From Antechinus flavipes (Eukaryota): a stretch of 64,000 nucleotides of DNA. The stretch is taken from assembly GCF_016432865.1 (NCBI RefSeq), contig NC_067403.1, positions 255,564,001 to 255,628,000 on the forward strand, written 5' to 3'. Made by a program: the position numbers and the translations under genes. The notes beneath the pieces are model-generated. The model did no database searches and was not told the origin of the DNA. It worked only from the letters and a program-made list of their open reading frames with translations. Each line of letters opens with the position of its first letter. The stretch's first letter is position 1. Shown piece by piece: positions 29,671-59,310 of this stretch.

Positions 29671-29874
29671 GGCCCCGGCCGGGAGACCTGGGGGGCGAAG
29701 GCGGCGGGTGAGCGACCTCCCCGCCCCTACGTGTCCACAGCGGGGGCGCGGGGCCGCGGACACCGGGGGTGGCGAACTCCGGGGCCCCGGCCCCGCCTCG
29801 GCGAACCCGCCGCCCCCGCCCGCGGGAGGAGCCCGGCCCCGAACGCCAGTCCTGCCCGGCCTGCGCTCACTCAC

Positions 29875-30060
29875 CGGGAGCTCGGGGCCCCCGAGCTCGC
29901 TGGTCTCGAGACGACGGCGATAGAGGTAAGGGGAGCAGCGGCGGGGAAGCGCTGACGGGACCGTGACGGGGGCGGTGGCGGCTCCACCAGTTAACAACAC
30001 TCCCCACCCCCTCCAGACCGGAAGTGCGAGCCGCAGACACCTCACTTCCGGCCGCTAGGG
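29875..30060 (-). promoter_or_regulatory. SYVN1: SYVN1 non-coding exon 1 and core promoter (copy A of the triplicated block)
   Basis: Donor CCG|GTGAGT at 29875/29874, exon 2 acceptor at 29687. Inverted ETS pair CCGGAAGT 30018-30025 and ACTTCCGG 30044-30051. Confidence 0.8.
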
Positions 30061-30549
30061 CGGCGGGATGGGATGTACCAAGTGCACCGCCCCTAGCCTC
30101 CTGCAGTCCTCTGGAAATCCTTTCCGATCTAAGCTGAACGGGCAGTTAGAATGCCGCGGAAAGTGGTGAAGGGGAGCAGAGGACTCCTTCCCGGGGAGTG
30201 GGCGCAGACTTTGGAGGAGTCGGGTATCCCCCCCTCCTGGTCACACATGGTATGTCCGGACCACCAAGAGGAGGGTTTTACCCTTCGCTACCTGAAGGGA
30301 GGGGGGAGACTCCTCTCTTGGAAAGCAGCCAGGGCTGAACTATTCGAAGGGGTGAACGACCAAGAAAGTTAAGATGGGAGACCCCGGAGGAAGGAAACAA
30401 GGAGAAAATGAGACACGAAATCCCTCAAAAACCAAGAAAAAAATCTGTGGAAAGTGTGTACCTTTGGGAAACGGAGTAGTACTTTCCCGCTGGGAAAATA
30501 TCTGTATCTTGAACTCCCCCTTTCAGGTCTGTGGAGTGAGATGGGTCGC

Positions 30550-30568
30550 CGTGGCCGCCTTTGATTGG
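30550..30568 (-). promoter_or_regulatory. ER stress response element (ERSE) upstream of SYVN1
   Basis: Perfect CCAAT-N9-CCACG on the minus strand (+ strand: CGTGG ccgcctttg ATTGG). Confidence 0.85.
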
Positions 30569-30581
30569 TCAGCTCAGAGGC

Positions 30582-30593
30582 ACGCGGACCAAT
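30582..30593 (-). promoter_or_regulatory. UPRE-II (XBP1) element upstream of SYVN1
   Basis: Minus strand ATTGG-T-CCGCGT matches the UPRE-II consensus ATTGG-N-CCGCGT described for the human HRD1 promoter (recalled). Confidence 0.75.
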
Positions 30594-32029
30594 AAAAAAA
30601 TTGTAAGTTTGCCTACTAATCGGAAAAGCGGATCGCACACGGCTGTTGCTAAGAGGAACGACCCTGGAAGCCAAGCCGACTGTCAAAGCGCGCGGAGATC
30701 TCGGGTGGGGGCGTGGCCGTGGAGGCCGAAACGGCAGGGACTGGAGAGCGGCCAAGGAGCGGAATCAGAGAGCGCTTTAGCCTTCGGGGCCGCGTGGACT
30801 GACGGGTCCATTAAGAATGGGGGCCGCCGGCTGCCCAGCTGGGGGCATGCGCCTCCCCTGACTCGTTTTGTGACCTTGGGCCAGGAGGGCATCCTTGCCC
30901 TTCCATGCCCTGCGGCTCCTGGTTGTTTCTCAGCCTTGGCCTCGAGTCTCTTCTGTCCGGATAGGGGAGATGAAGAAGCGGGAAAGTCTCTTAACTGAGG
31001 ACCTACTACGCGTTATAATAACTTAGGAGAGTCTGGCCGCTGAGAGCTTACTATGTATCGCACGTCCCTACGCTGACTGCGGGAAACCTTGTAACCTCCA
31101 AAGGCCTCAGTTGTTACTTTCGGCTCCGCCCCCACCCCGCGTCCAGAGAGGCCCACGCTAGAGACACGGGACCCGGATTCTGGTTACGCACTTGGTTTCC
31201 TTAACTCCAAGCTCCTTTGTTTGCACCCCTATGGTGCAAGTGTAGCTGTAACGGAGACCGTTGTAATATTATGGAAAGGGGCATTAAGGGGGTGAGGGAG
31301 ATGTGAGATGGCTGCCTCCAGGTGCCGCGACCAGTCTTAGTATCGTGTGAGCTGGCACCGAAGCTGAGCACTAAAAGCTCTCAGTGACGTGGGGGTTGGG
31401 AAGGGGGCACGTGCCCGGGAAGCCCGGATCTTGCCCTTCGGAGGAGTTAACCACCAAGCAATTCGAAGCCGGATAGTTCAGAGAACAAAGAGAAAGGTTT
31501 GCCCAAGTGGGGACTGCGGCCGCCCCTCAGGTGGAGCTGCTCCTTCTCTCCCCCCTCCCCCCAACAGGTGTGGCAGTGCCCTGACTTAGGGAGCTTTTCT
31601 AGACACTCCCCTAGGCAACGCTTTCTAAGACTTTCACTCGCGATTCCTTTTCACTGGACCCCAGAGATAAGTTATAAAACAGGTGTACAAATCAAACATT
31701 TGTGGACAACAAATCATTTTGCGACCCTCAGATTCAATTAGAAGATCCTAGATGACCTCAAGAACCAGTTTCCGAAGCTGGACATTATTACTGTAAGCCT
31801 ACACTTCTGGAGAACAACTGATCATAAAGTAAAATAGATATAGTTGCAAAAGAAACCAACACTACAGAAATACATTTATCAAACCCCCCCCCAAAAAAAA
31901 AAAAAAAAAAAAAAACAAGCCCTGGATCTCAAGAGCCCTTCTTGGAAGTTGTTTCCTGTATATAGCAACACTGAAAAGACTATTCCTGAAAGTGGGGCTG
32001 TTTGCAAAACTAGTGCATTTATAACAAGA

Positions 32030-33600
32030 GAACTGTTCGGTTCTGCACACATATATTGTATCTAGGATATACTATAACATATTTCACATGGCTGCCTGTC
32101 ATCTAGGGGAGGGGGTGGAGGGAGGGAAGGGAAGGGAAAAATCAGAATACAAGTGAGTGCAAGGGATAATGTTGTAAAAAATTACCCCGGCATATGTTCT
32201 GTCAATAAAAAGTTATAATTAAAAAAAAACAAAAACAACCTAATGCATATATAACCGTTAATATTCAATACAAAAATGACAAGTTTTTTGCCTGGAGAGG
32301 TTCATGTCCAAAGAATCATTATGTATCTAAAAATAGATAATTTTGATAACATCATTTTTAAAAAAATTTTGCACAAACAAAATGCAACCAAGATTAGAAG
32401 GAAAGCAGGGAACAGGGAACAAAATGTTTACTGGAAGCTTCCCAGATAAAGGCCTCATTTCACAACTAGATAGAGAACCAAGTCAATTCTATAAAAATAT
32501 GAGGCATTCCTTAATTAATGGTCAAAAGATATAAACAAGCAATTTTTAGAAGAAATCAAAGCTGAATTCAAAAGAAATTAAAGTGGATAGAGTACCAGCT
32601 CGGACGTCAGGAGGTCCAATTTGGCCTCAAACACTTAATACTCCCTAGCTGTGTGACCCTGGGCAAGTCACTTAACCCCAATTGCCTCAGCAAAAAAAAA
32701 AAAAAAAAAAAAAATCAAATATGAAGAAAATGCTCTAATCGTTCTTCATTACAGAAATGCAAGTTAAAACAATGTTGGGGTGCCACCTGATGTCTGTAAG
32801 ATTAGCTAATATGACAGAAAACAAATGCCAGAGTAAATGTGGCAAATTTAGAACATCAGTTCACTGTTGGTGGAATTGTAAACTGATCCAACCATTCTGA
32901 TCCTCTTGACTCCAAGGCCGGGGCTCTATTCACTTTACTGCCCCTCCAACCATTATGGAATGCAATTTGGAACTATATTCAAAGAGTTACAAAATTGGGC
33001 ATAACTTTTGACCTGGGAAATGACTATTTACTAGATCTACATCCCAAAGAGATCAAAGAAAAAGCAAAAGAACCTACATCTACAAAAATACAGCCCTTCT
33101 TTTTGTGGTAGCAAAGAACTGGAAACTGAGGGGATGCCCATCAAATGGAAGATGAACAACTTAGGACATATGATGGTGATGGGAGAGTATTGTGCGTCAG
33201 AAATGAGTAGCACACTGTCAGAAAAACCTAGGAAGACTTTCACGCAGAACTAGAACATTATATACAATAACCGTACATATGCTGATCAACTGGAAATAAC
33301 TTAGCTATTAGTAGTAATAGACAATTTTAAAGAACTTATGATTTAAAATGCTATCTTCCTCCAAGGAAGTGCAGATTGAAACTTATTTTTTAAAACTTTG
33401 TTATTTTGGGGGGGTTTTTGGTCTGTCTTTTGCAACATGGCTAACGTGGGAATATTTTGCATGACCACACATGTATAATCTATACCAAATTGTTTGCATT
33501 TTGATGCAACTCAAAATTAAAGTCAAATTTAATTGGAACTCAAAATTTAAAAAAAAATAAATTTTTTCATTTACATGTAATTGAGAAAATATTTTAAAAT
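32030..33600 (+). mobile_element. Cluster of L1 3' fragments containing a WSINE1-like SINE (32582-32714)
   Basis: L1 tail at 32030-32230 ending aataaaaagttataattaaaa. ORF2-like pieces gataaaggcctcatt and ggaatgcaatttggaactat. The SINE has an A tail. Confidence 0.75.
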
Positions 33601-34346
33601 TTTAAAATAATAAAGAAACATTTGGAAAGCTGGAGGAAGAGAAATCCAGATCATACGAAAGGAAGGCAGAGCATCCAAAGCCCATGAGGTTATAACTGGT
33701 AAAGCTTTTGGAGGAGACAAGATCCATCACCCTACCTGGGTTCTCACTCCTCTCTTCCCAGTTCCTTGCCCCTACATCCGGTGATTCCAATTCAGTCAAT
33801 AAACGTGCACGCATTAAAGGCCTAGTTACATGCCAAGCACTGAAATACCAGAAGACAACAGCAAAACCTTCCTAAAATTCAAGGAACTTACATTCTACGT
33901 GGGGAAACCTTCACGTCCAATTATCTGTTCACAGTCCCGAGTAATTTGAGGGCCAGAAAGTGCCTCGGTGGTCAGACATTGAACGATTTACAAAAGGATG
34001 TCCCATTACACAAACCTAACAAATCGTTGTGTGGTCCGTGTTTGAGGACCCCTGAGAAGAGGGTATATCACCTCTTGAGGAAGACCTCTCCACTCGGGCA
34101 TGCCTTTATAGTTGTGGGCAAATTTGTCCTGACAGAAACTCCACTCTGCCCTCCCCATTGCTGCTCCTGCCCTGCCCTCTAAGACCAAACCAAAGAAGTC
34201 TTGACTTTTCTTTTCAAGGAGCTTTTTAGCTCCTTGAAGATAGCCCTCATGTCCCAGATGAGAATCCCTTCCAGGCAAAATGTACCCACTTTGCAGGATG
34301 GACTCTTCCTGTCCTTCTTCATCCTGATTGTAAACCTTTATTCTCT

Positions 34347-34783
34347 CTCTCTCTTTTTTTTTTAAAAATAACTTTTTATTGATAGAACCCATGCCAGGGT
34401 AATTTTTTACAGCATTATCCCTTGCACTCACTTCTGTTCCGATTTTTCCCCTCCCTCCCTCCACTCCCCCTCCCCCAGATGGCAAGCAGTCCTTTACATG
34501 TTGAATAGGTTACAGTATATCCTACATACAATATATGTGTGCAGAACCGAACAGTTCTCTTGTTGCACAGGGAGAATTGAATTCAGAAGGTAGAAGTAAC
34601 CCGGGAAGAAAAACAAAAATGCAAGCAGTTTCTATTCATTTCCCAGTGTTCTTTCTCTGGGTGTAGCTGCTTCTGTCCATCCTTGATCAATTGAAACTGA
34701 ATTAGCTCTCTTTATCAAAGAGATCCACTTCCATCAGAATACATCCTTATACAGTATCGTTGTTGAGGTATATAATGATCTCC
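34347..34783 (-). mobile_element. 5'-truncated L1 with an 18-bp target-site duplication
   Basis: TGTAAACCTTTATTCTCT at 34329-34346 and 34784-34801 flanks an antisense L1 3' UTR, with the T-rich tail at the left end. Confidence 0.88.
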
Positions 34784-34958
34784 TGTAAACCTTTATTCTC
34801 TAGCATATGTTGGATCAGACTGAACTCAACAATCCAGATTAAGTCTGATGAGAGCTGGATTCAGTGGAATTCTCCCCTTCCCTATTCCCTTTTGCAAATG
34901 ACGAAGAAGGCCCTCACTTTTTTTGGCTACCACTTCACTCATGAAACTTGCAGGAATG

Positions 34959-35106
34959 TTTTTGGTTTTTTGCTGAGGCAACTGGGATGAAGTGACTTGC
35001 CCAAGGTCACACAGCTAGGAAGTATTAAGTGTCTGAAGCCAGATTTGAACTCAGGTCCTCCTGACTTCAGGGCTGGTGCTCTATCCATTGCACCACCTTG
35101 ATGCCC
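34959..35106 (-). mobile_element. WSINE1-like SINE
   Basis: Reverse complement of the same SINE consensus (aagtgacttgcccaaggtcacacagctag...gctctatccattgcacc). Confidence 0.85.
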
Positions 35107-36458
35107 TAGGAAGGTTTTCGTAACTGTTGTCTGTCTGCACCTGCCTGCTTCCCTTATATATTTGGCAACTAGATATTTTTGTTCCATGGGCAAGACTTTA
35201 TAGTTCATCTCTACTGAATTTCACGTTATTAGCCTGATCCTGGTGCTCAAGTCTGTCAGTACCTTTTCAGAGTCCACTATTAGCATCTCCTTCCAGTTCT
35301 GTCATCTGCAAATGAGCCGAATATACCATTGGTCCTATATCCAAATGACTGATAAAAATGTGAGATAACCCAGAGCCAGGCCCAGTCCTAGGATATGCTC
35401 CTCTTGAGATATCCAGGGGTGTGGACTTTGAAGCAAGAATAAGTACTCTCAGAGCAAGCTCAGATCCAAAAGAAGTCCTAGGAAAAGTCCCAAAGAAGGA
35501 AGGCGAGGATCCCCAAGGCAGAACATTGCATAAAGTACCAGGGTTTTTTTTTTTTGTTTGTTTGTTTGTTTTGGGTTTTTTGCTAAATTTTTTCTCTCCT
35601 TTTTTAAAAAAAAAAAATTATTAGATGGGATAATTCTCTAGGAGGAAGAACTGGGGAGAAAACCAAAACATAACTTATTGAAAAGAGCAACAGCTCTTGT
35701 TCTCAGTCTAGTCGTCTGAGCAGTTCTGAGCCCAGCTGGAAGGGTTTCGCCCAATCCATGGCCTTTTTCCCAAAAGAATCCTGTGCTTTTATAGCAAAGG
35801 CTGTGCTCCCATCTGGGTAGACTTTACTGATAGCAGTTCTTTCTGTCAAAAAAGGAGCTGAAGTTAGTCTGGGGACACCTCCCAGTTCTGAAAGGAGACA
35901 TGATGACTTGGTAAGAATCACTTCTTTTGAGGCCATCAGTACTTCTTGGATGACCCCATCTGGAATGGCTGCCCCTGCTTTCTCACCGGTCACTGATGTG
36001 CTCAGCTCTCAGACTCTCAGAGTTTATCTAGATGGGGGGGGGGAGCTTAAATTATGCCAGGGTCACTACAAGCTGGTATGCCCTCCTCTCACCTATCCCA
36101 GATACAAACTCCCCGCAAGACACCATTGTTTTGTCATTTCCCATATACACGTGACTCTCCGTTGCAGAAAAACACATGGAAATACAAAAAGAGCAGCTTT
36201 ACCTTCCGTGTTGTCAGCCAGTAAATATTTACTGTGTCTCCTACGTGCCAGGCTCTGGGACTATCATAAAGGAAAAGAGAGTTTGGGACCTTGAGAAGTT
36301 TCCATTTGAACAAATGACACAAAATGCAAATATGCACAAACACTCTTATGTGCAGGATAAAGAAAATAATTAATAGAGGGAAGTTCCTAGAATTCAGAGG
36401 GAGGAAAAGGCTTTCTGTAGAAGATGGAACTTTAGCTAGGACTTAAAAGAATGACAGC

Positions 36459-37607
36459 CAAAGGTTCTGATAAAGGCCTCATTTCCAAAATATATAGAGA
36501 ACTGACTCTCATTTACAAGAAATCAAGCCATTCTCCAATTGATAAATGGTCAAAGGAACATGAACAGACAATTTTCAGAAGAAGAAAAGGAAAGTATTTC
36601 TAGCCGTGTGTAAAGGTGCTTCAAATCATTATTGATCAGAGAAATGCAAATTAAGACAACTCTGAGATTTGACCACACATCTAGTCAGATTGGCTAGGAT
36701 GAACAGGAAAAGATAATGTTGAATGCTGGAGGGGATGCGGGAAAATTGGGACACTGATGCATTGTGGGTGGAATTATGAATGCAGCCAACCATTCTGGAG
36801 AGCAATTTGGAACTATGCTCAAAAAGTTATCAAACTGTGCATACCCTTTGACCCAGCAGTGTCACTATTGGGCTTATACCCCAAAGAGATCTTAAAGGAG
36901 GGAAAGGGACCCGTATGTGCAAGAGTGTTTGTGGCAGCCCTCTTTGTAGTGGCCAGAAGCTGGAAACTGAGTAGATGCCCATCAATTGGAGAATGGCTGA
37001 GTAAATTGTGGTATATGAACGTTATGGAATATTATTGTTCTGTAAGGAATGACCAGCAGGATGAATACAGAGAGGACTGGAGAGACTGACAGGACCTGAT
37101 GCTGAGTGAAACGAGCAGGACCAGAAGATCATTATGCACTTCAACAATAATACTGTATGATGATCAGTTCTGATGGATGTGATCCTCTTCAACAATGAAA
37201 TGAACCAAATTAGTTCCAATTGTTCAATAATGAAGAGAACCAGCTACACCCAGCGAAAGAACACTGGAAAATGTGAGTGGTGCACAACGTGGTATTTCCA
37301 CTCCTGTTATTGTTTGCTTGTATTTTTGTTTTCCTTCCCAGGTTATTTTTACCTTCTTTCTAAATCCAATTTTTCTTGTGCAGCAAGATAACTGTCTGAA
37401 TATGTATGCATATATTGTATTTAACTTATTTAACATGTATGGGACTACCTGCCATCTGGGGGAGGGGGTGGGGAAAAGAGAAGAAAAGTTGGAACAGAAG
37501 GTTTTGCAAAGGTCAATGCTGAAAAATTACCCATGCATATATCTTGTAAATAAAAAGCTATAATAAAAAGAAAGGAAAAAAAGGCTCTTCTAGCCCAAAG
37601 GGAAAAA
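36459..37607 (+). mobile_element. 5'-truncated L1 (ORF2 C-terminus and 3' UTR)
   Basis: ORF 36757-37089 (IWNYAQKVIKLCIPFDPAVSLLGLYPKE...CPSIGEWLSKLWYMNVMEYYC) matches the L1 ORF2 C-terminus. Tail aataaaaagctataataaaa. Imperfect TSD aaaagaatgacagc (36445-36458) / aaaggaatgactgc (37611-37624). Confidence 0.92.
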
Positions 37608-37710
37608 AAAAAAGGAATGACTGCAATTGAGCCAAGAATTTCTTATTTGATAGGGGGGAGATTGATGCCACTGGATTAAAGGGCATATAAGGTGAAAGAA
37701 GCCTGGAAAG

Positions 37711-41800: not shown

Positions 41801-44800
41801 TCTGATCTCTTCTATTCTCCTATGTTCCCCAGTGCAGCTGAAAATAATCCTTCAGTTATCCTTAGTTCTCTGCTCTTAACACCTTATGACAATTATTTGT
41901 ACATGATTGTTCCAGGCCTTTTTACTTATCCCCCAGTACCTACCATGACTCCCATCTTTTGTGCAAGTAGTTTTAAAAATTGGACTTTATAAGTTTAGTT
42001 GAGACCCTTCCTTTCATTCCTTTTGTTTACCCAACCCTGTGGAACCTTTGGAAAATAACCAAGGACTAGAAGTGAAGGCAACCTGCTCCCTGACATGAAG
42101 TCTATGTTATTTTTCTCTTAGTCAGTTCTCCTCCCTATCCATTCTGTTCATGAGGTCACTCTGCTGTGGATCATGGCGCGCCACACGATCCAAGGAAGCA
42201 GACAGTGGGGGTGACCAAAGGAGAGGGAGCAGCCACATGAATGTTTCGAGGAGGGGGACGACGACTGGTCCCATTGTTCTTGTTCCACGGATGGCTGAGG
42301 GATCTGGTGCAAACAGAGATGATCCAGAGATCAAAATGGTCAATATTAAGTAGATAGAGGAAGACAGGGAAACTAAGACACTGCCGGTGGAACGGTGCCT
42401 TGGTCCAAATCTCAACCTGGAATGAGGCTTTCCAAAGCTATGAAATGGCACATACCTGCTGACTCAAAGTGAAATAATGAGAGCTATTAACCGTTAGGCA
42501 AGCAGGGACGATGAATGGAGAACGAATGGCAGAACAGTGTTTGTATAATGGAAATATTGCAGGGCTCCGAGGTACGATGACTTTGATGCGTTCTGAGACA
42601 CTTATAAAGACGTCTGACACTGAGCAAAGTTAGGGGCACATTCACACAATAACCACAGTCATCTGAGAATGCAAAAATAAATTCTGACCTGCAACCATGG
42701 ACCCCATGCAATTCTGGATGTACAGTGAGTCTTCTAAATACAGAAAGCCCTTAAACACTGGTCCTACTATTGTTGCTCAGGAGACTGGGTTGGTTCTCTA
42801 ACAAATTTCAGTGATTCCAAATTTCTCCCTGCCCTAGCAAAACATCTCTTTTAACAGCCATACTACTCTTAAGAGTGATACGGATTTGGGAACACAAAGA
42901 ACTCGGAAAACTCCTAATGATAAATGTTCTAATGGGAAAAGGGGTCTCCAAACTGACCTCCGGGCCGTTCCTCTTACAGGGTACTCCATCTCCTATTTCC
43001 ATGTCTTTGTCCTGCCTGTGCTTGCCTGCCTGGAATTCGCTCTCTATTTACCTCTGCCTATAGAATCTCCAGCTTCCTTCAAGTATTAGCTGAAGGCAGC
43101 GACATGAGCTCTTCCCAAATGGCCCCAACTACCAGAGCCCTCTCCTGAAAAATTATTTTATACTTTATTTTTACATACCTGTGTCCATTCTGTCTCTCCC
43201 CAACAACCTCCAAGGAAGGAGGAATCCTCAGAGATTGTTCAATTTTGTCTTTGTATTCAATCAATTAATCAATCAGCATTAACTTTCTAAAATAATAGAA
43301 AACCAGTCCCTGCCTCAGAGAAGCCTCCATTCTAATGGGGGAACAACATCGATCTGAGTATATGCAGAACACACACAAGGAACAGAGGGGAGTGTGGGAA
43401 CGGGGGTGCTGGTGGCTGGGAGATCAGGAAAGGTTTTGTGGACAAGGTGAGGCTCCAGGTGCACTTGAAAGGACCAAGGATTCTAAAAAAGGCCCTGACA
43501 CAGGGCTTGGTAAATGGTAAGCCTTTGGTGGAAGACTATTGAATTGCTCCCTTCTCCAAGTCCACGGACCCTTTCCTTGTGATAAAAATGAGCAAATCCA
43601 AGAGCCACCATTCTGCCTCTGTAGTTCTCCCCAGGAAGTGGGGGTATGGGTGTCCTGCTTCCTCATCGGACCATCAAGTCTAAAACTAGTCACTGAAATG
43701 AGTCTGGGTCTGGCTCTTTCTGCGTGTAGTGTTCTCCTTCACCAGAGGGAAACCGAATATTCTGAAAATGTCGGCCTTCCTGTCCAAAGCACCTTCTTCT
43801 CACTTTCTTGTAGGGGTCGGTGTTCCCAGAGCTCTAGCTGAGGTGACCTGAACTAAAGAGGATGAAGCACCTAGGGATTTCTCCTAGGTGAGAAGGCAAT
43901 GCCTTGTGGGAGGGCAGTGAACCAGGCGCATCCTAAAGGCACCCCCGTCATGGGGAGGGGTCTCCTGAGTAAAGTGTGAATGAATTTTGGGAGGGTGATG
44001 AGGAGCTGAGGATTATCCACAAACCTAAGTAATTCAGAATTCTTGCGGCCCACTCTTCCAGCAAGCTGAGCCAACCTCAAGACCAGAAACATTCAACAAG
44101 GTCCATCGGAATCAAGGCAGAGACCAAGAACTGTATGAGAGCAGGGTGAACAGCCCATCACATCCCACTGAGATACCAACCCTCCCTCAAACCCACTATT
44201 AACCCCCCGCAGATTGAAGTGGAAGGGACCTCAGAAATCACCCAGCCCAACCCCTTAATTCTGGGGGGTGGAGTGTGTGTAAAATTATTTTTATTGACAT
44301 CTTTTGTTTTTACATCATCATTTCTGAACACGTCCCTCCCCTCTCCTGAACTCAGGAAACCATCCCTCACAACCAACATTTCAGGCCAGCACGCCAGCCA
44401 CCGCACAACAGAGCACGCCAGGTTTCCGTTCCAGTTTCCTAAACCTCTTCCAATAAAGGAGGGAGTTGCATTTGCTCCACTCTTCTATGGGGCGGTCACT
44501 GTCAGTACAAGCTTCCAGTTCCTTTTTGAAGGTTTTTCTAGGAATATTTTTGTAGCCATTCTTGATTATTATCCTATTTTGTGCTAAATGCTGGGGATGC
44601 AAAACCATCTGTGTCCCCACCCAAGGACCTTACAATTCTATTGCCAATCGTCCAGCTCCCTCACTTTACAGATGAAGAAACTGAGGATCAGGGTCACATG
44701 GTTACTGGGTGTCTCGGGCGGCACTTGAGCCCAAATCTTCAGGCTTTAGAGATTCCGGGGTCAAGTGCTAGAAAACGGGAAAACAAAGACAAAAGGCCCC

Positions 44801-45429
44801 AGCACTGGCTGCCCATGCTCCGGGGAAGGGATGCGGGTACACACACAGTGAGGGGACACAGTGGGCGTACACGGTGAGCCAGGGAAAGCCAGCCCGGGAG
44901 CCGCAGATCCCAGGTCTGGGAAGCTGCCACACACCTCCTGCGGGAGGCCTGGGCTGCTCTGGGATATCTCTGGCTGTGTTCTGCCGCCTGGGACTGAGCA
45001 GAACCAGGTGAAGCCCCCTTTTCCCTGGAGAGCCCCCGTCAAATATGCCCGTTCCATGGACAGAGCCCACCTAAAGCTTCCGGCACCCCCACGGCCTCGG
45101 AGCAGCCACCACTCTGCACAAGGGGAGCCAGAGGAGGGCTTGGAGTCATTAGCGGCCAAAGTCAGAGTGCGCTGGTGCCATTCCCGGCTGGGCGGCAGCT
45201 CCCTCCTGACATCACCAGGGGGGCCCCATATTCTGCCCCTTCTAGAGAAGCCTCGGAAAGATTCTTTCTGGGGTTTGACCCTATCCTCTGGCTCCAGATC
45301 AAGGGCTCAGAAGTCATGAGCCAAAGGGTTGGTGACGCTGCTGCTGGGTAGGACACGGCAAGTCTGGGAGCTGGGGGTGCACAGGGGGCTGGGGAGGGTA
45401 GGGGATGACCAGCAGTGGGGAGGGGGGGG

Positions 45430-45680
45430 TCAGGGAAGGAAAAAGAGGAGCTCGAGGAAACGAAGGGGAGAGAAACAGGGAAGGACAGAGGGACGAGAAG
45501 GAAAAAAGGAGAAAACAGGGCTAGAAAGGCAAGGGGGCAAAGAAAAAAGCAGAAAGCGGAAAACAACAGAAAACAGGGGAGAGGAAAATGAAGTAGGAAG
45601 AAAGGAGGAAAAGAGAAGATGGAATTGAGGAGGAAGGAGGAAAAAGCGGAAGAAAGCAGGGATGGAAGACGGAGAGGAGG
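45430..45680 (+). repeat. Purine-rich (GA) low-complexity tract, with a paralogous tract at 57520-57710
   Basis: Almost pure A/G, immediately on the intron side of the putative exon 1 donor in both duplicated units. Confidence 0.85.
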
Positions 45681-45720
45681 AGGGCAGAGGCTAGGCCTCC
45701 CGCCGAGCGCCCGCACTCAC

Positions 45721-46400
45721 CCGCAGCCCGGGGGTCCCGAGCTCGCGCTGATCCCGGTCGGCGGCGGCTCCAGCGGCGGGTCCTCCGCCAGCTCATTAGG
45801 CTACACTCCCTCCGCGCCGGAAATGCGGGCGGGGGACACGTAACTTCCGGACCCAGGGCTCTCGCGCGCTCTCTTTCTCTCTCCCCCCTTCACCCGCAGG
45901 GCCCTCGGACACAAGTACGCGGCAGCGGGGGCGGAACGAGTGCCCCGTGCACACACAGAACGTGCCACCAGGAATGGGAGGCCGAGGCTGGCGAGCCCCG
46001 CAGCACCTCGAGCTTTAGCGAGCGCCGCTTCCCGCTGGGAAACTGTGCGTCGTCAGCCTCGCCCCCCATAGTCCGCGGGGCGAGACGTCCCGAGAGCTCC
46101 CTTTGGATTGGTCTAGAAAGAACCGTGCGGACCAATCAGCAGGTAGAGATAGCCTAGCCAATGGCGACAGCGGGCCTCGGCAGGCTGTTGCTACGGCGAC
46201 GGGACTCTGGCTGGGACGGGGAGGGATGGAGCCTAGGCCAAGGCCGAACCTGGAGAATAATTAATGAACGCCAGCCCTAGGCTGTGTGGGCCGAGGGGAG
46301 AAGGCTGCGGGCAGGGCACCGCCACCCGGGAGTCCCTCCTCCGTAACCAAGCCGTTGCTAAGGCTCGTGGATTTCATCTTTGCAACAGCTCTCAGACACG
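45721..46400 (-). promoter_or_regulatory. CpG-island promoter and exon 1 paralogous to SYVN1's (copy B)
   Basis: Exon end gcgagctcgggacccccgggctgcgg|gtgagtg versus SYVN1 gcgagctcgggggccccgagctcccg|gtgagtg. ETS pair at 45817-45824 and 45843-45850. CCAAT boxes at 46107-46111, 46132-46136 and 46158-46162. X-box-like GTTGCTACGGCGAC at 46187-46200. Confidence 0.75.
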
Positions 46401-47911
46401 CCCCCTTCTCTCCCTCCCCTTGCCGCAGGCCCTCGCGGCCCTAGGAGGTGACTCGCCGGAGGCCGGGACAGGCCTTCCTCCAGCTTTCTCCGACCCATCC
46501 TCCCCTCAGCCACTAACGCCCTGTCCCTCCGCTACTTAATAAACACCGTGTGGCCTCCGGGATCAAATACAAAACGCCGCTTGGCGTTCGAAGCCCCTGG
46601 TACCCCAGCCCCCTCGCCGTGCCGTTCTTGCACCTTTCTTCCTTTGCACTTGGGTGATCCCGGCCTCCTGGCTGTTCCAGGAAAACACTCCATTTCCCAA
46701 CCCTGGGCATCCTCTCCGGTTGTCTCATGAAAGCAATCACCTCCCTCCTCAGCTCCAACTACAGACCCCTCCCTTCCCCCTTCAAGTCCCAGATAAAAGC
46801 AAAGCTAGGAAGCATCTCCCCCTCCGCCTTAGCCTACAGAGCTTCCTTTTTTGAGCTCCGCTTTATCTTGTCTAGCTCTCATTTGTACGGGGCTGTTGAT
46901 CAGGGTCTTCCCCATTAGAATCTAAGCTCCTTGGAAGCAGGGACTTGAGTTTTCTGTCAACAGTGTCTGCGACTGCCTGGAAGAGTGGATGCTTAAGACT
47001 TGTTGCCTGGTGCTGCAGTCTTGCTCTGCTCTGTTGCCCCTAAGTTGGGTGACCTTGGATTAGGGGCATCTCCTCCCTGGGCTACAGGGCGTCTGTGCCA
47101 TGTCTTCCAGGGGCCTTTCTCTTTCCTGGTCTCTGCCTCTGCTCATGTCCCCAGCACCCCCTCTAACAAGGAAACAAGGGGCTGGCACCTTTCAGTGGCT
47201 AAGCATCTCTGGGACATGCCAGGTGAGATGGAGGAGTTAAAGGCCCGAATGCTCAGAACCAAGGGAAAGGTTTGCCCAAGTGGGAAGAACTGCTGCCCCC
47301 TGAGGTGCAGCTGCCAGGACCTTCCCCACACAGGTGTGGCAATGCCAACTTAGGGGTCTTCGGATGAAGGCCGGAAATCTAGACTGTCTATATCACTTCA
47401 GTCCATGGTTCTAGCAAGCAGCTGATCGGATTCTGAATGATGGGGGCTCCTGGGGAACCTATGGAATGACGTGATATGATACATCTGAGTATAGCGTACA
47501 GCTCTCCATTTAGCTCTGCCATCCTTTCTCGGCCTGATTTTATTTATAGGAAGATTGTCAAAATTGATAGGATTCGAGGCCTCCATCAATATGTCATCTT
47601 TTGATCAATGAAAAAATATTCCACGTTTGGATTGCCAACGATCAAAAATATCCCATCGGTCTAAAACCTGAGGTTTTTTTGTTTTTGCACTGTCTCGTCT
47701 TTGCCCGTGACCTCCCTGGCAACCAGTAGATTTGTACAAATGATTATCTTCATTAAGTCACTTTGCATCTTGGCAGGGTGACCCAAGGCAAGACTTTAGC
47801 CTCTGCTTGCTGCCATTTCCTCATCCACAAAAAGGGTGGTTTTAAGGACTGAGTCAGGCACCGGTAAAGGGTTTTGCAAATGTTGAAGTACTTTATACAC
47901 TAGCTACGATC

Positions 47912-53300: not shown

Positions 53301-53559
53301 AATTAGCAGCCAACCCTCTCCAACCCTCTTTCTCTCTATGCTTAGTCTCAAAATCCCCATTTCTCTCCCCCCTTCCCCCCAGCCCGGGGTAGGGGCCTCC
53401 ACGTTTTGGGGGAAATGGCTCAGGTCCCCCTCTATGAGCAGGCTTCCCTTTCCATAGAATGCTTCAGGTAAGTTCTTTCCTGAGAGGGCCTGGAGGACCA
53501 TGGGGCTGTACTGATGTGAAAGAAGTGAGCTATCTCAGCATAATTACAATTCACATGAA

Positions 53560-54005
53560 TTTACCTGCACCAAAGGGTCTCTCGACGGCAACCTCAAATC
53601 CCTGGATGAAGGTGGGGAAGACTCCTCGTCCAGGCCCTGGAGAAGAGACGACAGCCTGTTAGCCAAGTAGCAAAGATCCGCTGACAGCTGACCTCAGAGA
53701 GGTGATGACCTCTCAGCTGTTTCTGACCCCGAGGATGAGTGAGAGTCCTGGAAGGGTAAAGGTCCTCATCCAAGCTGTGGTCCTGGGGTTATATTTGCTC
53801 AGTCATCCCTCTGCACCGGGAAGGGACCTTCGTGTGACCCGTGCCGATGATTTCTGGCCTGTGTTCTCTTCCACGCTGGGACTCATGCTGAACTCCTTTA
53901 GAACCTGTCATTTACCTCTTTGTGACCTTTGCTTTCAGTTTTCTTCTCCCCCCACTAAATAACTTCTTGTACTGCCAGTCAGGCTTTTCCTATTCCTAAG
54001 GACAG
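53560..54005 (+). mobile_element. Possible LTR at the 3' end of the ERV-L-like fossil
   Basis: Located just after the pol remnants. Has a pyrimidine-rich end with taaataac and a terminal CA. No matching 5' LTR was recognised. Confidence 0.3.
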
Positions 54006-57000
54006 GGGCTTGTCAGGGCCCTTTAAGGAGTCAGAGGTTGCCTAGAAGGTCTACAGACTCATGATGGAAGTAACGTCTTCTAGGGACTGTGCCACACAGA
54101 CGGGCTGGTTTTTCCTTATTAGGCAAGGAACTGGGTCCAGGGGTTTAAGGCCCCGGCCCTGCTCTGGCTTCTAGATCCAGTAGGGAATATTGAGCCGCTG
54201 AGGCGGCAGGGACTCTCAGACCAGCCATTTCCCACTCTCAAAGATATCCCTGATTTTGCGATGACACTGTCTCACAGGGGTTGCCAAGGTGCAGGTGACT
54301 TACAAGGCAAAGAGCAGAGCCCCAGTAGAGGGAAGGTACCAAGTCTGATTTGTCAGTGTGGGCCCAGAAGCTATCGCCATGGAGACGGCTCATGGGAAAT
54401 CAGGAAGTTGTCTGGGACGGTGGCCCATCAATATGACAAAAGACGGAAATGGACGATGTTGGAGGGGAGATGGGGAGACGGGCAAACTGGTACATTGCTG
54501 GTAGAACGCTGACTGACCCAGTTCTTACGTAATCCAAGTTAGGGTTACACTCTAAGTCACTAAGAGGTGTGTGTTCTTTGATAAGATAACTATAGGATTA
54601 TTAAAACCAAAGATCTTGAGGTGGAAGGGACCTTAGAGGCCATCAGGTTCAGTTCCCTCACTTTAGAGATAGGGACATTGAGGCGAGATAATAATTTGCC
54701 CAAGGTCAAACATCTCATAAGTGGGTGTAGCAGAATCTGAACTCGACTTTTTTTTTTTTTTGCTGAGGTGATTGGGGTTAAGTGACTTGCCCAGAATCAC
54801 ACAGGTAGGAAGACCCAAAGTGAGCAGAACAGGGAGAACATTTACGTAATGACGACAATAACCTAAATAAAGGAAAACAACACTGATAAGACTTCACAAT
54901 TTTAATCAAAGCATGGAACAACATGGCCGCTGAGGGCTGACATAGCCATGCCCTCCCGCCCCATGGGAGAGGGGTGGCCCATTATAGGTGTGGAGAAAAG
55001 CCTGACTTTTCAGACATGACCACCAGGTTGATGTTTTCCTTGACCGTACTTATTTGTTACAAAGATTCAATTGGTCCTGTGGTATGTGTCAGTGGGGAGT
55101 GACAGTTATATTAAAAATATATGAATAATTAAAATATGGAAAAAACAAAACAAAATAAAAAAAACCCTGAAAGATAATAGATGAATGGCAGGGATGATGG
55201 AAGGCCTAGAGAGAAGCATGGAGCACTTCTGTGGAAGTTAGAGAAGCAGGGGAAGAAGAATCATGTGGAATGAGAAACGGGGATGTGTATATATTGATCT
55301 GCCCCAATGGACATATGGGAGTATGGTGGGACCTCGACACATGGCGAGATCCTCAGATGATGCTCTCCACGGGGACAAAGGAGACCCAGCTCGATCTCTA
55401 TCAGCGTTTTCAGTGACCCCAACCTGTTCCCTGCACAAGTCCAAGTCTTCAAACCCTCATTTCCACAGGAGATGTTTAAGTGCTGTTAATCAAGGAATAC
55501 TAAGAGTTCAGAAGACCCTCATGGCAAAATCCTAAAGGGAAATAAGGAGACCTCCAAACAAGCCTCCATGCTGCCATTTATACAGGATATTCCAACTGCC
55601 TTGTCTCCACGCCTTAGCACCAGTTGTGTCTTGTCTTGACCGACTCCTTCCGCCCCCACTCCATCCATCTTCACCTCCGCCTCTTGTTTAGCTCAACTGT
55701 CACCTCAGACAGAAGCTGTTCTTATTTCTCGGCAACAGGGCCTTCCTTGGGAAATCCCTTCGAACATACTCATGTCATATTCTCCTTGTAGCTCCCCTCA
55801 CACCTCCATGAATGCAGCATTCTCAAGGTCAAGGGTTTTTGATTTTTGTCTGCATTCAATCAATCAACTGGCATTTATTAATTAAGATAATTGAGAAGCA
55901 AGCCCTCCTCAGAGACGCCTCCATTCCTAAGAAGAAAATCCAAGAGCCACCATTCTGCCTCTGTAATTTTTCCCTTCCTAAAAAGTGTGTGTGTATGGAG
56001 GGGATGGGGATGGGGGAGTGGGGTGTGTGTGTGTATATGTTCCCTGCAATGAGTCTGGGCCTGGCTCTCTGTGTGTAGTGTTCTCCTTTACCAGAGGCAA
56101 ATGATCTGCAAAGGCAGGAACACTGCACCCCTTGGAGGGTAATGGGGTAGAGAGAAAGGAACAGAAGACCAGGGGGAGCAAGGATTTGCCCCAAGTTCCT
56201 AGGGTGGGTTCCAAGGTTAGAGTGGACAAGAACCACGCCCCCTTTCTGACCTCCCTGTCCACAGCATCTTCTTCTCACTCTTTTTTGTGGGGGTTAGTGC
56301 TCTCAGGCACTTGCTCAGGTGACCTGAGGGAGGGGAAGAAGCAGCTTGGAATTTCTCCCAAGAAGAGGATCTTCTTTCAAAAATGCTCCCTGCAGAGCCA
56401 CAGTTTGGGAGCGAATGAACAGCAGTTTAGGAAGGACCTTCTGAAGAAAGTGTGGGTGGATACTGGGGGGGAGGAGAGGATGGAACTCATTGGAACCCAC
56501 AAAATACCCTCTTATAGAAGAAAAAAAACCCAAAAAACTAATGAGATTTCTGTCTCACCTCTACCCCAAGTCCAGAAGGGAAGATTTTCTAGTATTCAAT
56601 TAAAAAAAAATTCAGTTTCTGTTAGGCCTTGCTATGAATGCTTTTTTTGAATCCAAACAATCAACAAACATCTATTAAGAGCCTATGATGTGCCAGGAAC
56701 TAGGGAATACAAAGAAAAAAAAACAGAGAAACAATCAGCTTTAAAGATGCCCATGTTCTCATGTCCTTGTCTACCCTCTACATTTTCCAGCCAGAAAATC
56801 AGGTACAGGTTGGAAATAGCCTGCAAGTTCACACCAAAATCAGATGGTCCAAGTGGAGACTGGATTCAAGTGCTCAAGCTTTGGGGATCCCTCAGTCAGC
56901 ACAACCCTGACTGCTTACCCAGGAAGGAGTGTCTGCCCTTGGAAGAGGGACTAGGGGGAGTAGGCCAGGAAAAGACTGGTCTTGGAGGAAGCCCAGCCTC

Positions 57001-57800
57001 TCTGCCCCAAGGCAGCCCAAGCATTCCCTTAGCCTTGGGATCTAACTTGGTCTCTGCCGACCCCTACCTGGGATGCCCAATCCCATTCAACCAAGCCTTT
57101 CTGAGGCACCCTTGGACAAGCTTCCTCTCACCTCCTCCTTTTCTCCTTCTAAGCACAGAGAAGATCCATGGGGCTTGGGCATGTACCCTGGATCTGAACC
57201 CCTGTCCAGGGAACCTGTCCCCACCTCTCCCATCGTGGGGGTGGGGGTGGGGGGGGGAAGGCAGCCAAGACGTGCAAACTCTCCAGCCTAGTCCCCGGGT
57301 TTGAATACCTAGTGATTCCTCTTTGGTGGTAATTGGGAGGGGGAGAAGAAAGGGAGGGAGGCTCAGAGAGAAGAAAAGGAGGGATGAGGGAGGAAAGACA
57401 CCAGTTATGATGGCAATGTACCTGAAAACTGTTTAGTTAAAAAAAAAGAAAAAGAAAAAAAAGATGTACATTTTCAAAAACCAATGTAATGATTTTAATA
57501 AAATAGAGGAAGCTGAAGGATGAAAGGAAGACACAAAGATGGGGTAGAGGAGAGGAAGGAAGGGGAAGAGAGAGAAAAGGGAGAGAGGTGGAGGAAGAGG
57601 AAAAGGAAAAAGAATGAGGAAGAGGAGGAAAGAAGGATGAGGAAGGAGGGAGAAAAGAAGGAGAGGAAGAGAGGAGGAGGAGAGGAAGAAGAGGGAGAGA
57701 GAAGGAGGGGACTCACGAAGCCAGCCCCTCCCCGCCCCGCAGTGGCCTGGCATCCCTCTCCTTCAGGGCAGCCGCCCAGGGACGGATCACAACAACTTAC

Positions 57801-58700
57801 CCCGGTGACGGCCCGCGGAAGGTACCGGCCCGGGCAACCTTTGGCCCAAGGCACCAGGAAGCTAGCAGACGCCGCAGCCTAGTAACCGGACTCCCCGCCC
57901 CATCCCAGACGGAAGTGCGGACTGTAGACCCTCCACTTCCGGACGGGGCGGAGAGGCGAGCAGGAGGCTGGGGATGTACCAAGCGCCCCCCTCCTGGATC
58001 CTGTTCATCTCAAAGCGGGTCACTTCAGCGCAGGGCACCAGATAATTCATTAGAGCATTGGCGGGAGCGTATTTCCATGAAGAACTTGGGAAATCAGGAG
58101 TTTGTTGTGGAAGAAAACGCAGTAGTCTCCCCCCGTTCCTCGGGTCAAACATGGTATTATCCTAACGCTCTCTTCAGCCCAGAGGGCTACGGCCCCGCCC
58201 TCGGCCTACAATTTGGCCTGTACCATCGGTGGGGGTGAGAGGTCAAAGAAATTGCTTTTGGAGGGCCGAGGAAACGAAGTCCAGGAGAAATGCGTCCAGG
58301 GTCCACACCTTTAGTAACACTAACATAAACTATGAAGATCATACTAAGTCCGAAGGACATCTTGGGTCCCGGCGTTAAGAATAAAGTTTTTCTAGATCAG
58401 AAACACCACTGCTCTACTCCGTGCGAAAGATAGACCCTCGTGGTTTCTTCAAAGTCGCCGGGACCCTCACAGCCAATCAGGCTCCGAAGGGCGGTGAGGG
58501 GGCGTGACTTCAGTTTAGGTCGGGCTAGCTGAGTCTCCCAGGGGAGTGGCGGGAGATGTGGAAAGTGACACAGGCGCGGAATTACGAAACGCGAATTGGC
58601 TAAGAGGTCTTTAATTAGGGCCTGCATCAGGGGGCGGGGCGGTTAGCATCCTAGAGTCCTCTCCGTAGGCGCCGCTCCGGGGAAGGAGCTTCGGGCTGAG
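57801..58700 (-). promoter_or_regulatory. CpG-island promoter and exon 1 paralogous to SYVN1's (copy C)
   Basis: ccagacggaagtgcggactgtagaccctccacttccgg (57905-57942) versus SYVN1 ccagaccggaagtgcgagccgcagacacctcacttccgg. ggatgtaccaag is shared. Donor GGG|GTAAGT at 57801/57800. Homology to 31030-31580 continues to 59308. Confidence 0.78.
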
Positions 58701-59310
58701 ACCTCTCGCTGCTCCCCGGCTTTCTCTGTCCTTGTCTCGGCCTCTCCATCTCCTCAGTCCCCCCTGCGGAGCAGAGAGTCTGTGGGCTGGGAGATTACTT
58801 TCTATCTCACGTTGGGCGGCGTCTGCGGGGAAACAAAGTAACCTCGGAGGGAAAGGCCTTAGTTGTTACTTTCGGCTTCGCCCCCATCCCTGGCGGGTTT
58901 TCTTGCGTTCCCGAATCTTCTTGAGTCCCTTGCTGGAGATCGGGGCTACCGCACGCCCTCTGGTTATACCCCGGACCCCTAGCTCCAAGCTCTTTATTTG
59001 CGCCTCCTCGGTCTCGGGGTAGCGATAAAGGAGGCCGTTGTAATGCTATGGAAAAGGGCTTTTAGGGATGTGGGGGAGATGTGAGGAGGCTGCCGCCAGA
59101 TGCCAAGGGGGAAGTTCCTCGACCCCCAATATCGGATTATTCAAAAACTTCTGGGAAGAGGGCCCCTGGCCCTAAAGCCTTTCAGAGGAGTTCTCTCTCA
59201 AGCAATTAGAAGCGTGAGAGCTCAGGGTACAAAGGAAAAGGTTTGCCCAAGTCGCAACAGTAGCGGCCCCCTCAGATGGGCCTCCCCCCCCCCAGGTGTG
59301 GCAGTGCCCC

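What the first reader, a model, noticed from the sequence alone, without database searches (positions are those of the whole stretch)
29850..59310. The SYVN1 promoter and first exon exist in three paralogous copies
Blocks A (29.85-31.6 kb), B (45.7-47.35 kb) and C (57.8-59.3 kb) are collinear, in the same orientation, and all still CpG-rich. Each has an inverted ETS pair with exactly 18 bp between the sites (30018/30044, 45817/45843, 57910/57935) and a minus-strand GT donor just downstream (29874, 45720, 57800). Each ends with aaaggtttgcccaagt (31493, 47266, 59237) and caggtgtggca(g/a)tgcc (31565, 47331, 59293). The rest has diverged considerably. Retained CpG density, motif spacing and donor sites suggest B and C are live promoters, but no SYVN1 coding exons follow them. 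This looks like promoter recycling to create new transcription units. I know of no such genes in the human SYVN1-SPDYC interval.
Basis: partly seen in the sequence, partly recalled or inferred. Interest (0 to 1): 0.85.

Follow-up and report, generated by a model that had tools for sequence, protein, structure and literature searches.

The report
Triplicated SYVN1 promoter in a marsupial
In this dasyurid-like marsupial, a roughly 12-kb stretch starting inside the first intron of the ER-quality-control gene SYVN1 was duplicated twice in tandem, leaving two extra copies of its CpG-island promoter upstream that look maintained but have lost the ER-stress switches; whether they are transcribed was not testable here.

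Summary
Blocks A (29845-31596), B (45690-47360) and C (57800-59309) are collinear, same-strand paralogues.

A is the genuine SYVN1 promoter. It aligns continuously with Dromiciops and, at its core, with Arctic fox. The ETS segments of B and C also match the fox and Dromiciops SYVN1 core promoter, so they are not a dispersed repeat.

The copies belong to a tandem array with a period of about 12 kb. The duplications appear to postdate the split from the Dromiciops lineage.

B and C are the only CpG islands in the 32-64 kb interval. Their CpG retention fits a long unmethylated history. Substitutions avoid the two ETS motifs (2/32 against 13/36 in the spacer, p = 0.003) and two 16-nt upstream anchors. 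Each copy keeps a GTRAGT donor. Both have lost the ERSE and UPRE elements.

I read them as maintained, probably active, ER-stress-blind promoters firing towards SYVN1. Whether their transcripts are non-coding RNAs or alternative 5'UTR exons of SYVN1 is untested.

This is a new member of a known kind, and interest is moderate.

The parts
29536..29687 (-). SYVN1 exon 2, the first coding exon; ATG at 29670, acceptor just upstream of 29687
   Evidence: MFRTAVMMAAS... matches SYVN1 proteins; a polypyrimidine tract and CAG precede 29687.
29875..30017 (-). SYVN1 exon 1 region (non-coding 5'UTR; TSS not mapped) ending at donor CTCCCG|GTGAGT (G of GT at 29874)
   Evidence: Intron 1 is about 187 bp. The region is 88-100% identical to Dromiciops.
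29845..31596 (-). Block A: the authentic SYVN1 CpG-island promoter and upstream region (CpG islands 29507-30231 and 30508-31541)
   Evidence: CpG islands; collinear with Dromiciops L009 17292-19616; core and ERSE segments match fox SYVN1 upstream.
30018..30051 (-). ETS module of A: CCGGAAGT, 18-bp spacer, ACTTCCGG in gene orientation
   Evidence: 34/34 identical to Dromiciops. The motifs are conserved in fox. EBS-1 is reported as crucial for SYVN1 expression (PMC1794516).
30484..30667 (-). CCAAT/ERSE segment of A, with ERSE-I (CCAAT-N9-CCACG) at 30550-30568
   Evidence: The fox has an ERSE-I about 480 bp upstream of its ETS site. Human HRD1 has an ERSE-I at -506 (PMC4971459).
31027..31456 (-). 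Segment shared by A and C only (seg6); contains a UPRE-like TGACGTGG at 31385 in A
   Evidence: (z = 57).
31493..31580 (.). Right anchors of A: AAAGGTTTGCCCAAGT and CAGGTGTGGCAGTGCC
42779..45689 (.). Tail of array unit 1, paralogous to 55379-57799; ends in a GA-rich tract (45440-45695) at the unit junction
   Evidence: collinear, 60-78% identity.
45690..47360 (-). Block B: paralogue of the SYVN1 promoter plus the 3' end of exon 1 (CpG island 45533-46757)
45714..45723 (-). Donor of B, CTGCGG|GTGAGT (G of GT at 45720), homologous to the SYVN1 exon-1 donor
   Evidence: (A-B exon-1 segment z = 9).
45817..45850 (-). ETS module of B: CCGGAAGT, 18-bp spacer, ATTTCCGG
46029..46210 (-). CCAAT segment of B: both CCAAT/ATTGG boxes are kept, the CCACG half of the ERSE is lost, and an X-box-like palindrome lies near 46187
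   Evidence: (z = 22).
47266..47346 (.). Right anchors of B
55379..57799 (.). Tail of array unit 2; ends in a GA-rich tract (57501-57708)
57800..59309 (-). Block C: paralogue of the SYVN1 core promoter, seg6 and right anchors (CpG island 57698-59149)
57794..57803 (-). Donor-like site of C, ACCGGG|GTAAGT (G of GT at 57800); not alignable to A's donor
57909..57942 (-). ETS module of C: CCGGAAGT, 18-bp spacer, ACTTCCGT
59237..59308 (.). Right anchors of C

Best explanation
A segment of about 10-12 kb was duplicated twice in tandem. Its proximal end lies about 30 bp inside SYVN1 intron 1, and it runs upstream through non-coding exon 1, the CpG-island promoter and the upstream region. This happened in the lineage leading to this dasyurid-like marsupial, after it split from the Dromiciops lineage. 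Blocks B and C are the promoter portions of units 2 and 3. They have stayed unmethylated CpG islands. They keep under selection the paired ETS (GABP-type) sites of the SYVN1 core promoter and two short upstream elements, and each has a strong 5' splice site on the SYVN1 strand. Both have lost the ER-stress elements (ERSE-I and UPRE). They therefore most likely work as constitutive ETS/NF-Y/Sp1-type promoters that fire towards SYVN1 and are blind to the unfolded-protein response. Shown: the paralogy, the origin from the SYVN1 promoter, the array structure, CpG-island status, motif-specific conservation and loss of ERSE/UPRE. Inferred: germline hypomethylation, promoter activity and the fate of the transcripts.
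For: Paralogy and collinearity. Origin: the ETS segments of B and C match the fox SYVN1 core promoter (alignment A6) and the Dromiciops A orthologue. Only one copy is present in the fox (10 kb upstream) and in Dromiciops (2.9 kb beyond the anchor). Timing: in near-neutral seg6, K(antA-antC) is 0.42, below K(antA-droA) and K(antC-droA), both 0.60. Anchor 1 is identical in the three antechinus copies but differs at 3 sites in Dromiciops. CpG islands: B and C are the only ones in 32-64 kb, with o/e 0.62-0.70 against 0.14-0.34 in flanks. 40-50% of CpGs are shared between copies, against about 0.5-0.6 expected if unmethylated and under 0.03 if methylated; losses are not mainly TpG/CpA; the unit tails keep 0 CpGs. 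Selection: ETS motifs show 2/32 changes against 13/36 in the spacer, p = 0.003, the same pattern as antechinus vs fox; the anchors show 1/64 against 31/80 in their flanks. Donors: perfect GTRAGT 98-110 bp downstream of the ETS pair in B and C. ERSE/UPRE loss. Literature: EBS-1 is crucial for SYVN1 expression (PMC1794516); ERSE-I and UPRE lie in the HRD1 upstream region (PMC4971459); most unmethylated orphan CpG islands show promoter activity (PMC2944787, PMC5927659).
Against: There are no expression, CAGE or methylation data. Outside the short motifs, the core-promoter sequence of B and C has diverged at about the neutral rate (K 0.3-0.55 to A, while A and Dromiciops differ by only 0.085). Large parts of the original block are lost in each copy. 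The motif tests are partly post hoc, because the copies were first spotted through these motifs. Orthologues of B and C in other dasyurids could not be fetched, so conservation across species is unknown. The dating rests on one 357-site segment and assumes no gene conversion.
Confidence: 0.55

Rival explanations
1. A refinement of the best explanation: B and C are distal alternative promoters and first exons of SYVN1 itself. Their short non-coding exons would splice from the retained donors (45720, 57800) into the exon-2 acceptor at 29687, giving the same protein from ER-stress-insensitive promoters. That would be promoter subfunctionalisation by tandem duplication.
For: SYVN1 exon 1 is pure 5'UTR and the ATG is in exon 2. 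B and C lie upstream on the same strand with 99th-percentile donors, and B's donor is homologous to A's. The Dromiciops SYVN1 gene model extends more than 4.4 kb upstream of the canonical core promoter, so distal 5' exons of SYVN1 are annotated in a marsupial. Distal CpG islands are known to serve as alternative promoters of downstream genes (PMC5378174).
Against: No junction evidence exists. Transcripts would have to read 16-28 kb through the other promoter copies, past about a dozen strong-looking acceptors. B's exon carries an ATG that would be in frame with the main ATG, adding about 31 Arg-rich residues before the signal-anchor, which would be awkward if it lies inside the transcript.
Confidence: 0.22
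2. B and C are functionless relics. They would be CpG islands that persist passively because bound ETS/Sp1-type factors keep them unmethylated, producing at most unstable promoter-associated RNA and contributing nothing to fitness.
For: Each copy shows mosaic loss of whole segments. Divergence outside the short motifs is at about the neutral rate. The ER-stress elements are lost. No ORF or conserved exon follows them.
Against: Substitutions are significantly depleted in the ETS motifs and in two 16-nt anchors relative to their immediate flanks, in both copies. CpG-island status has been kept at a divergence of about 0.4 substitutions per site. Both copies keep perfect donors.
Confidence: 0.18
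3. B and C act mainly as distal regulatory DNA for SYVN1 or its neighbours, for example as orphan CpG islands that boost enhancers or as boundary elements, rather than as promoters of stable transcripts.
For: The best-conserved parts include two short upstream elements, which look like factor binding sites. Orphan CpG islands can potentiate enhancers (bioRxiv 10.1101/2020.08.05.237768).
Against: Retention of strand-specific consensus donors just downstream of the ETS pair is not expected for a pure enhancer. No factor was identified for the anchors, and I saw no convincing CTCF-type motif by eye (not scanned formally).
Confidence: 0.1
4. The shared blocks are an ordinary dispersed repeat or transposon, a structured RNA gene, or the 5' end of a plus-strand coding gene family.
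For: None was found, apart from the mutual partial complementarity of the two anchors.
Against: The blocks are homologous to the single-copy SYVN1 promoter of fox and Dromiciops. There are no further copies in the window. Rfam gives no hit in the blocks. Folding z-scores run from -0.3 to +1.4 on both strands, and there is no covariation. Reading frames across the anchors differ between copies. The exhaustive protein search of a block C frame gave only one weak hit.
Confidence: 0.02

Closest known systems
Orphan (intergenic) CpG islands acting as promoters or alternative promoters (PMC2944787, PMC5378174, PMC5927659)
   Same: B and C are intergenic CpG islands upstream of a gene, in its orientation, with housekeeping-type motifs (ETS, CCAAT, GC boxes) and a sequence signature of long-term hypomethylation.
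   Different: Their origin is traceable: they are diverged tandem copies of the downstream gene's own promoter. Their activity and methylation state have not been measured.
Tandemly duplicated alternative first exons, each with its own promoter, spliced to common downstream exons (UGT1A and clustered protocadherin type; from general knowledge)
   Same: There are repeated promoter-plus-first-exon units upstream of shared exons, on the same strand, each with its own 5' splice site.
   Different: Here the first exons are non-coding, the units are only three and highly diverged, and no splicing to the common exon has been shown.
The canonical SYVN1/HRD1 promoter (EBS-1 ETS site; ERSE-I and UPRE; PMC1794516, PMC4971459)
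   Same: B and C keep the ETS module, and B keeps the CCAAT (NF-Y) boxes of this promoter.
   Different: B has lost the CCACG half of the ERSE. C lacks the whole ERSE segment and the UPRE-like site. The spacer and flanks that are 98-100% conserved between antechinus A and Dromiciops are free to vary in B and C.
Partial (5'-end) segmental duplications of genes that seed new non-coding transcripts (general knowledge)
   Same: The copies contain a promoter and first exon without the coding body.
   Different: This is tandem and local, with a ~12-kb period, directly upstream of the parent gene. Read-through into the parent gene is therefore possible.

Membership tests
Paralogous (segmental/tandem) copies of the SYVN1 promoter | Significant, collinear, same-strand alignment among the copies | tested here: met
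   E down to 1e-46; z-scores 8-57 against shuffles; consistent order in all three pairs.
Paralogous (segmental/tandem) copies of the SYVN1 promoter | Homology of the extra copies to the orthologous SYVN1 promoter of other species | tested here: met
   B and C match fox L007 10025-10091 and Dromiciops L009 at 17975-18030, 18539-18631, 19041-19090 and 19477-19607.
Paralogous (segmental/tandem) copies of the SYVN1 promoter | Not a genome-wide dispersed repeat | tested here: inconclusive
   There are no further copies in the 64-kb window or in the two outgroup loci. The rest of this genome could not be searched.
CpG-island promoter (orphan CpG island) | At least 500 bp, GC at least 55%, CpG o/e at least 0.65 | tested here: met
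   B 45533-46757 (GC 0.63, o/e 0.77); C 57698-59149 (GC 0.58, o/e 0.73).
CpG-island promoter (orphan CpG island) | Unmethylated in the germline and in tissues | not testable with these tools
   Only inferred. The shared-CpG fraction of 40-50% fits unmethylated evolution, not the under 3% expected if methylated.
CpG-island promoter (orphan CpG island) | Transcription initiation (CAGE, 5' ends, H3K4me3) | not testable with these tools
   No expression data were available. Exact-ORF look-ups and protein searches for assembled transcripts were blank.
Alternative first exon of SYVN1 | Upstream of a non-coding-exon-1 gene, on the same strand, with a consensus 5' splice site | tested here: met
Alternative first exon of SYVN1 | Observed splice junction to SYVN1 exon 2 | not testable with these tools
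   No RNA data. The only indirect hint is the long Dromiciops gene model.
ER-stress-responsive (UPR) promoter | ERSE-I (CCAAT-N9-CCACG), ERSE-II or UPRE (TGACGTGG/A) | tested here: not met
   A has an ERSE-I at 30550 and TGACGTGG at 31385. B and C have none. B keeps CCAAT but lost CCACG. C's aligned UPRE position is not conserved.
Transposable element / dispersed repeat | Many copies, terminal repeats or a poly(A) tail, target-site duplications, TE-like ORFs | tested here: not met
   Three copies only, homologous to a single-copy promoter in the outgroups, with no TE ORFs in the blocks.
Structured non-coding RNA in the right anchor | Rfam match, or folding stability and covariation above background | tested here: not met
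   no Rfam hit; z from -0.3 to +1.4; the paired columns are invariant, so there is no covariation support.

The most novel reading that the evidence does not exclude
Tandem duplication split the regulation of SYVN1 between promoters. The proximal promoter A keeps ER-stress inducibility (ERSE/UPRE). The distal copies B and C, which kept only the ETS/NF-Y core and two upstream elements, would drive stress-independent or tissue-specific SYVN1 mRNAs with alternative 5'UTR exons. That would be a dated, sequence-traceable case of promoter subfunctionalisation in an essential ERAD ligase gene, restricted to part of the Australian marsupial radiation.
Probability: 0.2. Interest if true: 0.6.

Novelty: new member of a known kind. 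Interest (0 to 1): 0.4.

Why it matters
Promoters are usually thought to arise by co-option or point mutation. Clear cases where a gene's own CpG-island promoter and first exon were duplicated in tandem and then kept for tens of millions of years are few. Here the parent promoter is well characterised (ETS/EBS-1, ERSE, UPRE), and the copies show which elements were kept (the ETS pair, the CCAAT boxes in B, two upstream 16-mers) and which were dropped (the ER-stress elements). If B and C are active, they give a natural experiment on what maintains a CpG island, and on how stress-inducible and constitutive control of an ERAD ligase can be separated. If they are silent, the locus shows how long an island can outlive its function. 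It is a species- or clade-level curiosity, not a new mechanism.

Tried and rejected
1. SYVN1 coding remnants after B or C. tblastn with all SYVN1 exon peptides found nothing significant.
2. Coding genes in 32-64 kb. No convincing ORFs on either strand. The exhaustive search with a block C frame gave one weak hit.
3. Known RNA families or a structured RNA in the blocks. Rfam was blank, folding was no better than shuffles, and there was no covariation.
4. Orthologues from Logan contigs found via the SYVN1 5' ORF. L001-L006 matched exons only and come from distant vertebrates.
5. Marsupial SYVN1 proteins. None appeared in the best 120 of 960 hits. Two attempts to build an antechinus-weighted query profile failed, because MAFFT misaligned the exon fragments; those alignments were not used.
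6. Exact look-ups of ORFs inside B and C. Not on record.
7. Metagenome scans for the ETS module and for the anchor pair. No matches.
8. Other marsupial loci. Gracilinanus and Trichosurus returned no DNA, the Trichosurus hit is a paralogue elsewhere, and the Petaurus protein is not on record. B and C orthologues were therefore never reached.
9. Upstream-ATG avoidance in the putative first exons. Uninformative: 0, 1 and 1 ATG against 0.6-0.9 expected.
10. A conserved second exon in the unit tails. There is a shared acceptor-like site (about 43848 and 56325), but no shared donor, so this was left as a lead.
11. A CTCF site in the anchor region. Only a weak resemblance by eye, not scanned formally, and not claimed.
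Full report
**What is in the window.** The window has no N and carries SYVN1 on the minus strand. The start codon (MFRTAVMMAAS...) is at 29670 in exon 2, and the last coding exon ends near 25.9 kb. MRPL49 ends at 24321 on the plus strand. An MRPL49 exon is 98% identical to the Tasmanian devil protein and 77-88% to other marsupial orders. This confirms a dasyurid-like marsupial. Earlier notes of this scan name the yellow-footed antechinus, which I did not verify to species. SYVN1 exon 1 ends at CTCCCG|GTGAGT (donor at 29874), intron 1 is about 187 bp, and exon 2 begins at 29687, 17 nt before the ATG. Exon 1 is therefore pure 5'UTR.

**Checking the observation.**
- The degenerate pattern for the inverted ETS pair matches only at 30019, 45818 and 57910, with none in 100 shuffles. 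The spacing is 18 bp in all three.
- Perfect GTRAGT donors sit on the minus strand at 29874, 45720 and 57800, in the 99th percentile of all minus-strand GT sites. They lie 98-144 bp downstream of the ETS pair, against a base rate of 0.38-0.44 such sites per kb per strand.
- The two right-hand anchors occur once in each block and nowhere else.
- Sensitive self-alignment shows collinear, same-strand similarity. A-C covers 31027-31581 vs 58774-59309 (64% over 592 columns, E about 1e-46) and 29992-30103 vs 57883-58003. A-B covers four collinear pieces, and B-C four more.
- By segment, against shuffles, the exon-1/donor piece is shared by A and B only (z = 9). The ETS piece is shared by all three (z = 8-16). 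The CCAAT/ERSE piece is shared by A and B only (z = 22). 31027-31456 is shared by A and C only (z = 57). The right anchor is shared by all three (z = 19-29).
- With Takai-Jones-like criteria, B (45533-46757) and C (57698-59149) are the only CpG islands between 32 and 64 kb.
- SYVN1 exon peptides find nothing downstream of B or C.

**Block A is the real SYVN1 promoter, and B and C derive from it.** Dromiciops locus L009 aligns with the window continuously from the SYVN1 3' end through the promoter (window 29346-30901 vs L009 17292-18885, 76%) and on to the right anchor (31337-31590 vs 19380-19616). In 50-bp windows, the ETS region is 98-100% identical to Dromiciops and the CCAAT/ERSE region 92%.

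The Arctic fox locus L007 matches A's core promoter (74%) and ERSE segment (76%). It has a perfect ERSE-I about 480 bp upstream of its ETS site. That agrees with A's ERSE-I at 30550, about 530 bp upstream of the ETS pair, and with the published human position of -506 (PMC4971459). The ETS site EBS-1 is reported as crucial for SYVN1 expression (PMC1794516).

The ETS segments of B and C independently hit the fox core promoter and the Dromiciops A orthologue. B's CCAAT segment, C's seg6 and both right anchors also hit Dromiciops. Only one copy exists in the fox within 10 kb upstream, and in Dromiciops within 2.9 kb beyond the anchor. A dispersed-repeat origin is therefore excluded, as far as these data reach.

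**Architecture: a tandem array.** Similarity between B and C extends to lower coordinates (42779-45689 vs 55379-57799, 60-78%, collinear). SYVN1 itself has no counterpart of this stretch. The simplest model is three tandem units: unit 1 at 29845-45689, unit 2 at 45690-57799, and unit 3 from 57800 to beyond the window. Each starts about 30 bp inside SYVN1 intron 1 and runs upstream. The "left flanks" of B and C are then the tails of units 1 and 2, and GA-rich tracts mark the junctions. The copies are too diverged to be an assembly artefact.

**Age.** In seg6, which evolves almost neutrally between antechinus A and Dromiciops (K = 0.60), A and C are closer to each other (K = 0.42) than either is to Dromiciops. 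The unit tails differ by about K = 0.45-0.5. Anchor 1 is identical in the three antechinus copies but differs at three sites in Dromiciops. The duplications therefore seem to postdate the split from the Dromiciops lineage, at roughly 0.7-0.8 of that depth. That is tens of millions of years, but probably not pan-marsupial. This assumes no gene conversion and rests on a few hundred sites.

**Signs that B and C are maintained.**
- CpG content. The blocks have o/e 0.62-0.70, against 0.14-0.34 for the tails and inter-block DNA. 40-50% of CpGs are shared between paralogous island segments, and the losses are not mainly TpG/CpA. The tails share none. With the observed divergence, about 0.5-0.6 sharing is expected for unmethylated DNA and under 0.03 for methylated DNA with tenfold CpG transitions (the rate figure comes from general knowledge).
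- ETS module. In the gap-free 34-bp module, A equals Dromiciops at 34/34. B and C together carry 2/32 changes in the two motifs against 13/36 in the spacer (one-sided Fisher p = 0.003). Antechinus vs fox shows the same pattern, 1/16 against 6/18.
- Anchors. The two 16-nt anchors show 1/64 changes against 31/80 in the adjacent 20-nt flanks. Anchor 2 is also invariant in Dromiciops.
- Donors. Both copies keep a consensus donor at the expected place.

These tests are partly post hoc, since the motifs were what drew attention to the copies.

**Signs of relaxation and divergence.** Outside those motifs, B and C have diverged from A at about the neutral rate, while A itself is frozen (ETS segment K: A-Dromiciops 0.085, A-C 0.32, A-B 0.55). 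Each copy has lost whole segments. B keeps both CCAAT boxes but lost the CCACG half of the ERSE (alignment A7). C lacks that segment, and its position aligned to A's TGACGTGG is not conserved. Neither copy has any ERSE or UPRE. If they are active, they should not respond to ER stress.

**What they do.** No coding potential follows them, and no known or structured RNA lies in them. Two outputs are possible. One is separate spliced non-coding RNAs; a shared acceptor-like site lies 1.5-1.9 kb downstream of each donor. The other is alternative 5'UTR first exons that splice into SYVN1 exon 2. The second is structurally simple, because exon 1 is non-coding. It has an indirect hint: the Dromiciops SYVN1 gene model (722 aa) runs more than 4.4 kb upstream of the canonical core promoter. 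On the other hand, B's exon contains an ATG that would be in frame with the main start. I could not decide between the two.

**Comparison with known kinds.** The closest known kinds are orphan CpG islands acting as promoters or alternative promoters (PMC2944787, PMC5378174, PMC5927659) and tandemly duplicated first-exon/promoter units. This locus is a new, datable example, not a new kind. I found nothing on it in the paper searches, none of which targeted SYVN1 in marsupials, so this does not show that it is undescribed.

**Limits.** There were no expression or methylation data.

**Verdict.** Novelty: a new member of a known kind. Interest: 0.4.

Noticed in passing
L009 13950-22481 (Dromiciops gliroides): The annotated SYVN1 gene model is 722 aa, against about 594-630 aa in other species. 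It runs off the locus end more than 4.4 kb upstream of the canonical core promoter, which suggests distal 5' exons or a merged upstream gene model.
   Followed up: partly
window 27705-27746 and 28636-28677: A perfect 42-bp repeat lies in two different SYVN1 introns. The second copy is orthologous in Dromiciops (93%), and the first sits just upstream of the acceptor of the QFKKAV exon. There is no Rfam match.
   Followed up: partly
window 39946-40151 and 48465-48661: A pair of direct repeats about 200 bp long and 82% identical, 8.5 kb apart. They are younger than the array units and not collinear with them, so they are probably a dispersed element (family not identified).
   Followed up: no
window 32000-37600: A cluster of L1-like fragments in both orientations, with ORF2-like internal repeats, lies between block A and the tail of unit 1. 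It accounts for about 5.6 kb of the extra length of unit 1. MIR-like elements recur at about 11.2, 24.5, 32.6, 35.0, 54.8, 60.4 and 62.5 kb.
   Followed up: no
window 45440-45695 and 57501-57708: GA-rich (plus strand) low-complexity tracts sit exactly at the junctions between array units. They could be substrates or scars of the duplication events.
   Followed up: partly
window 46175-46200: Copy B has an X-box-like palindrome (GTCGCC-GT-AGCAAC in gene orientation) where A and the fox keep only the AGCAAC/CAAC half. This agrees with another note on this window (s1-189073).
   Followed up: partly
window 45776-45796 (minus strand): An ATG in B's putative first exon would be in frame and open into the SYVN1 start codon if that exon were spliced to exon 2. 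It would add about 31 arginine-rich residues.
   Followed up: partly
window 31493-31580, 47266-47346, 59237-59308: The two conserved anchors are partly complementary to each other (GGTTTGCCCA with TGTGGCAGTGCC). Anchor 2 contains an E-box (CAGGTG) overlapping a T-box-like AGGTGTG. The binding factor is unknown; the motif names come from memory and were not tested.
   Followed up: partly
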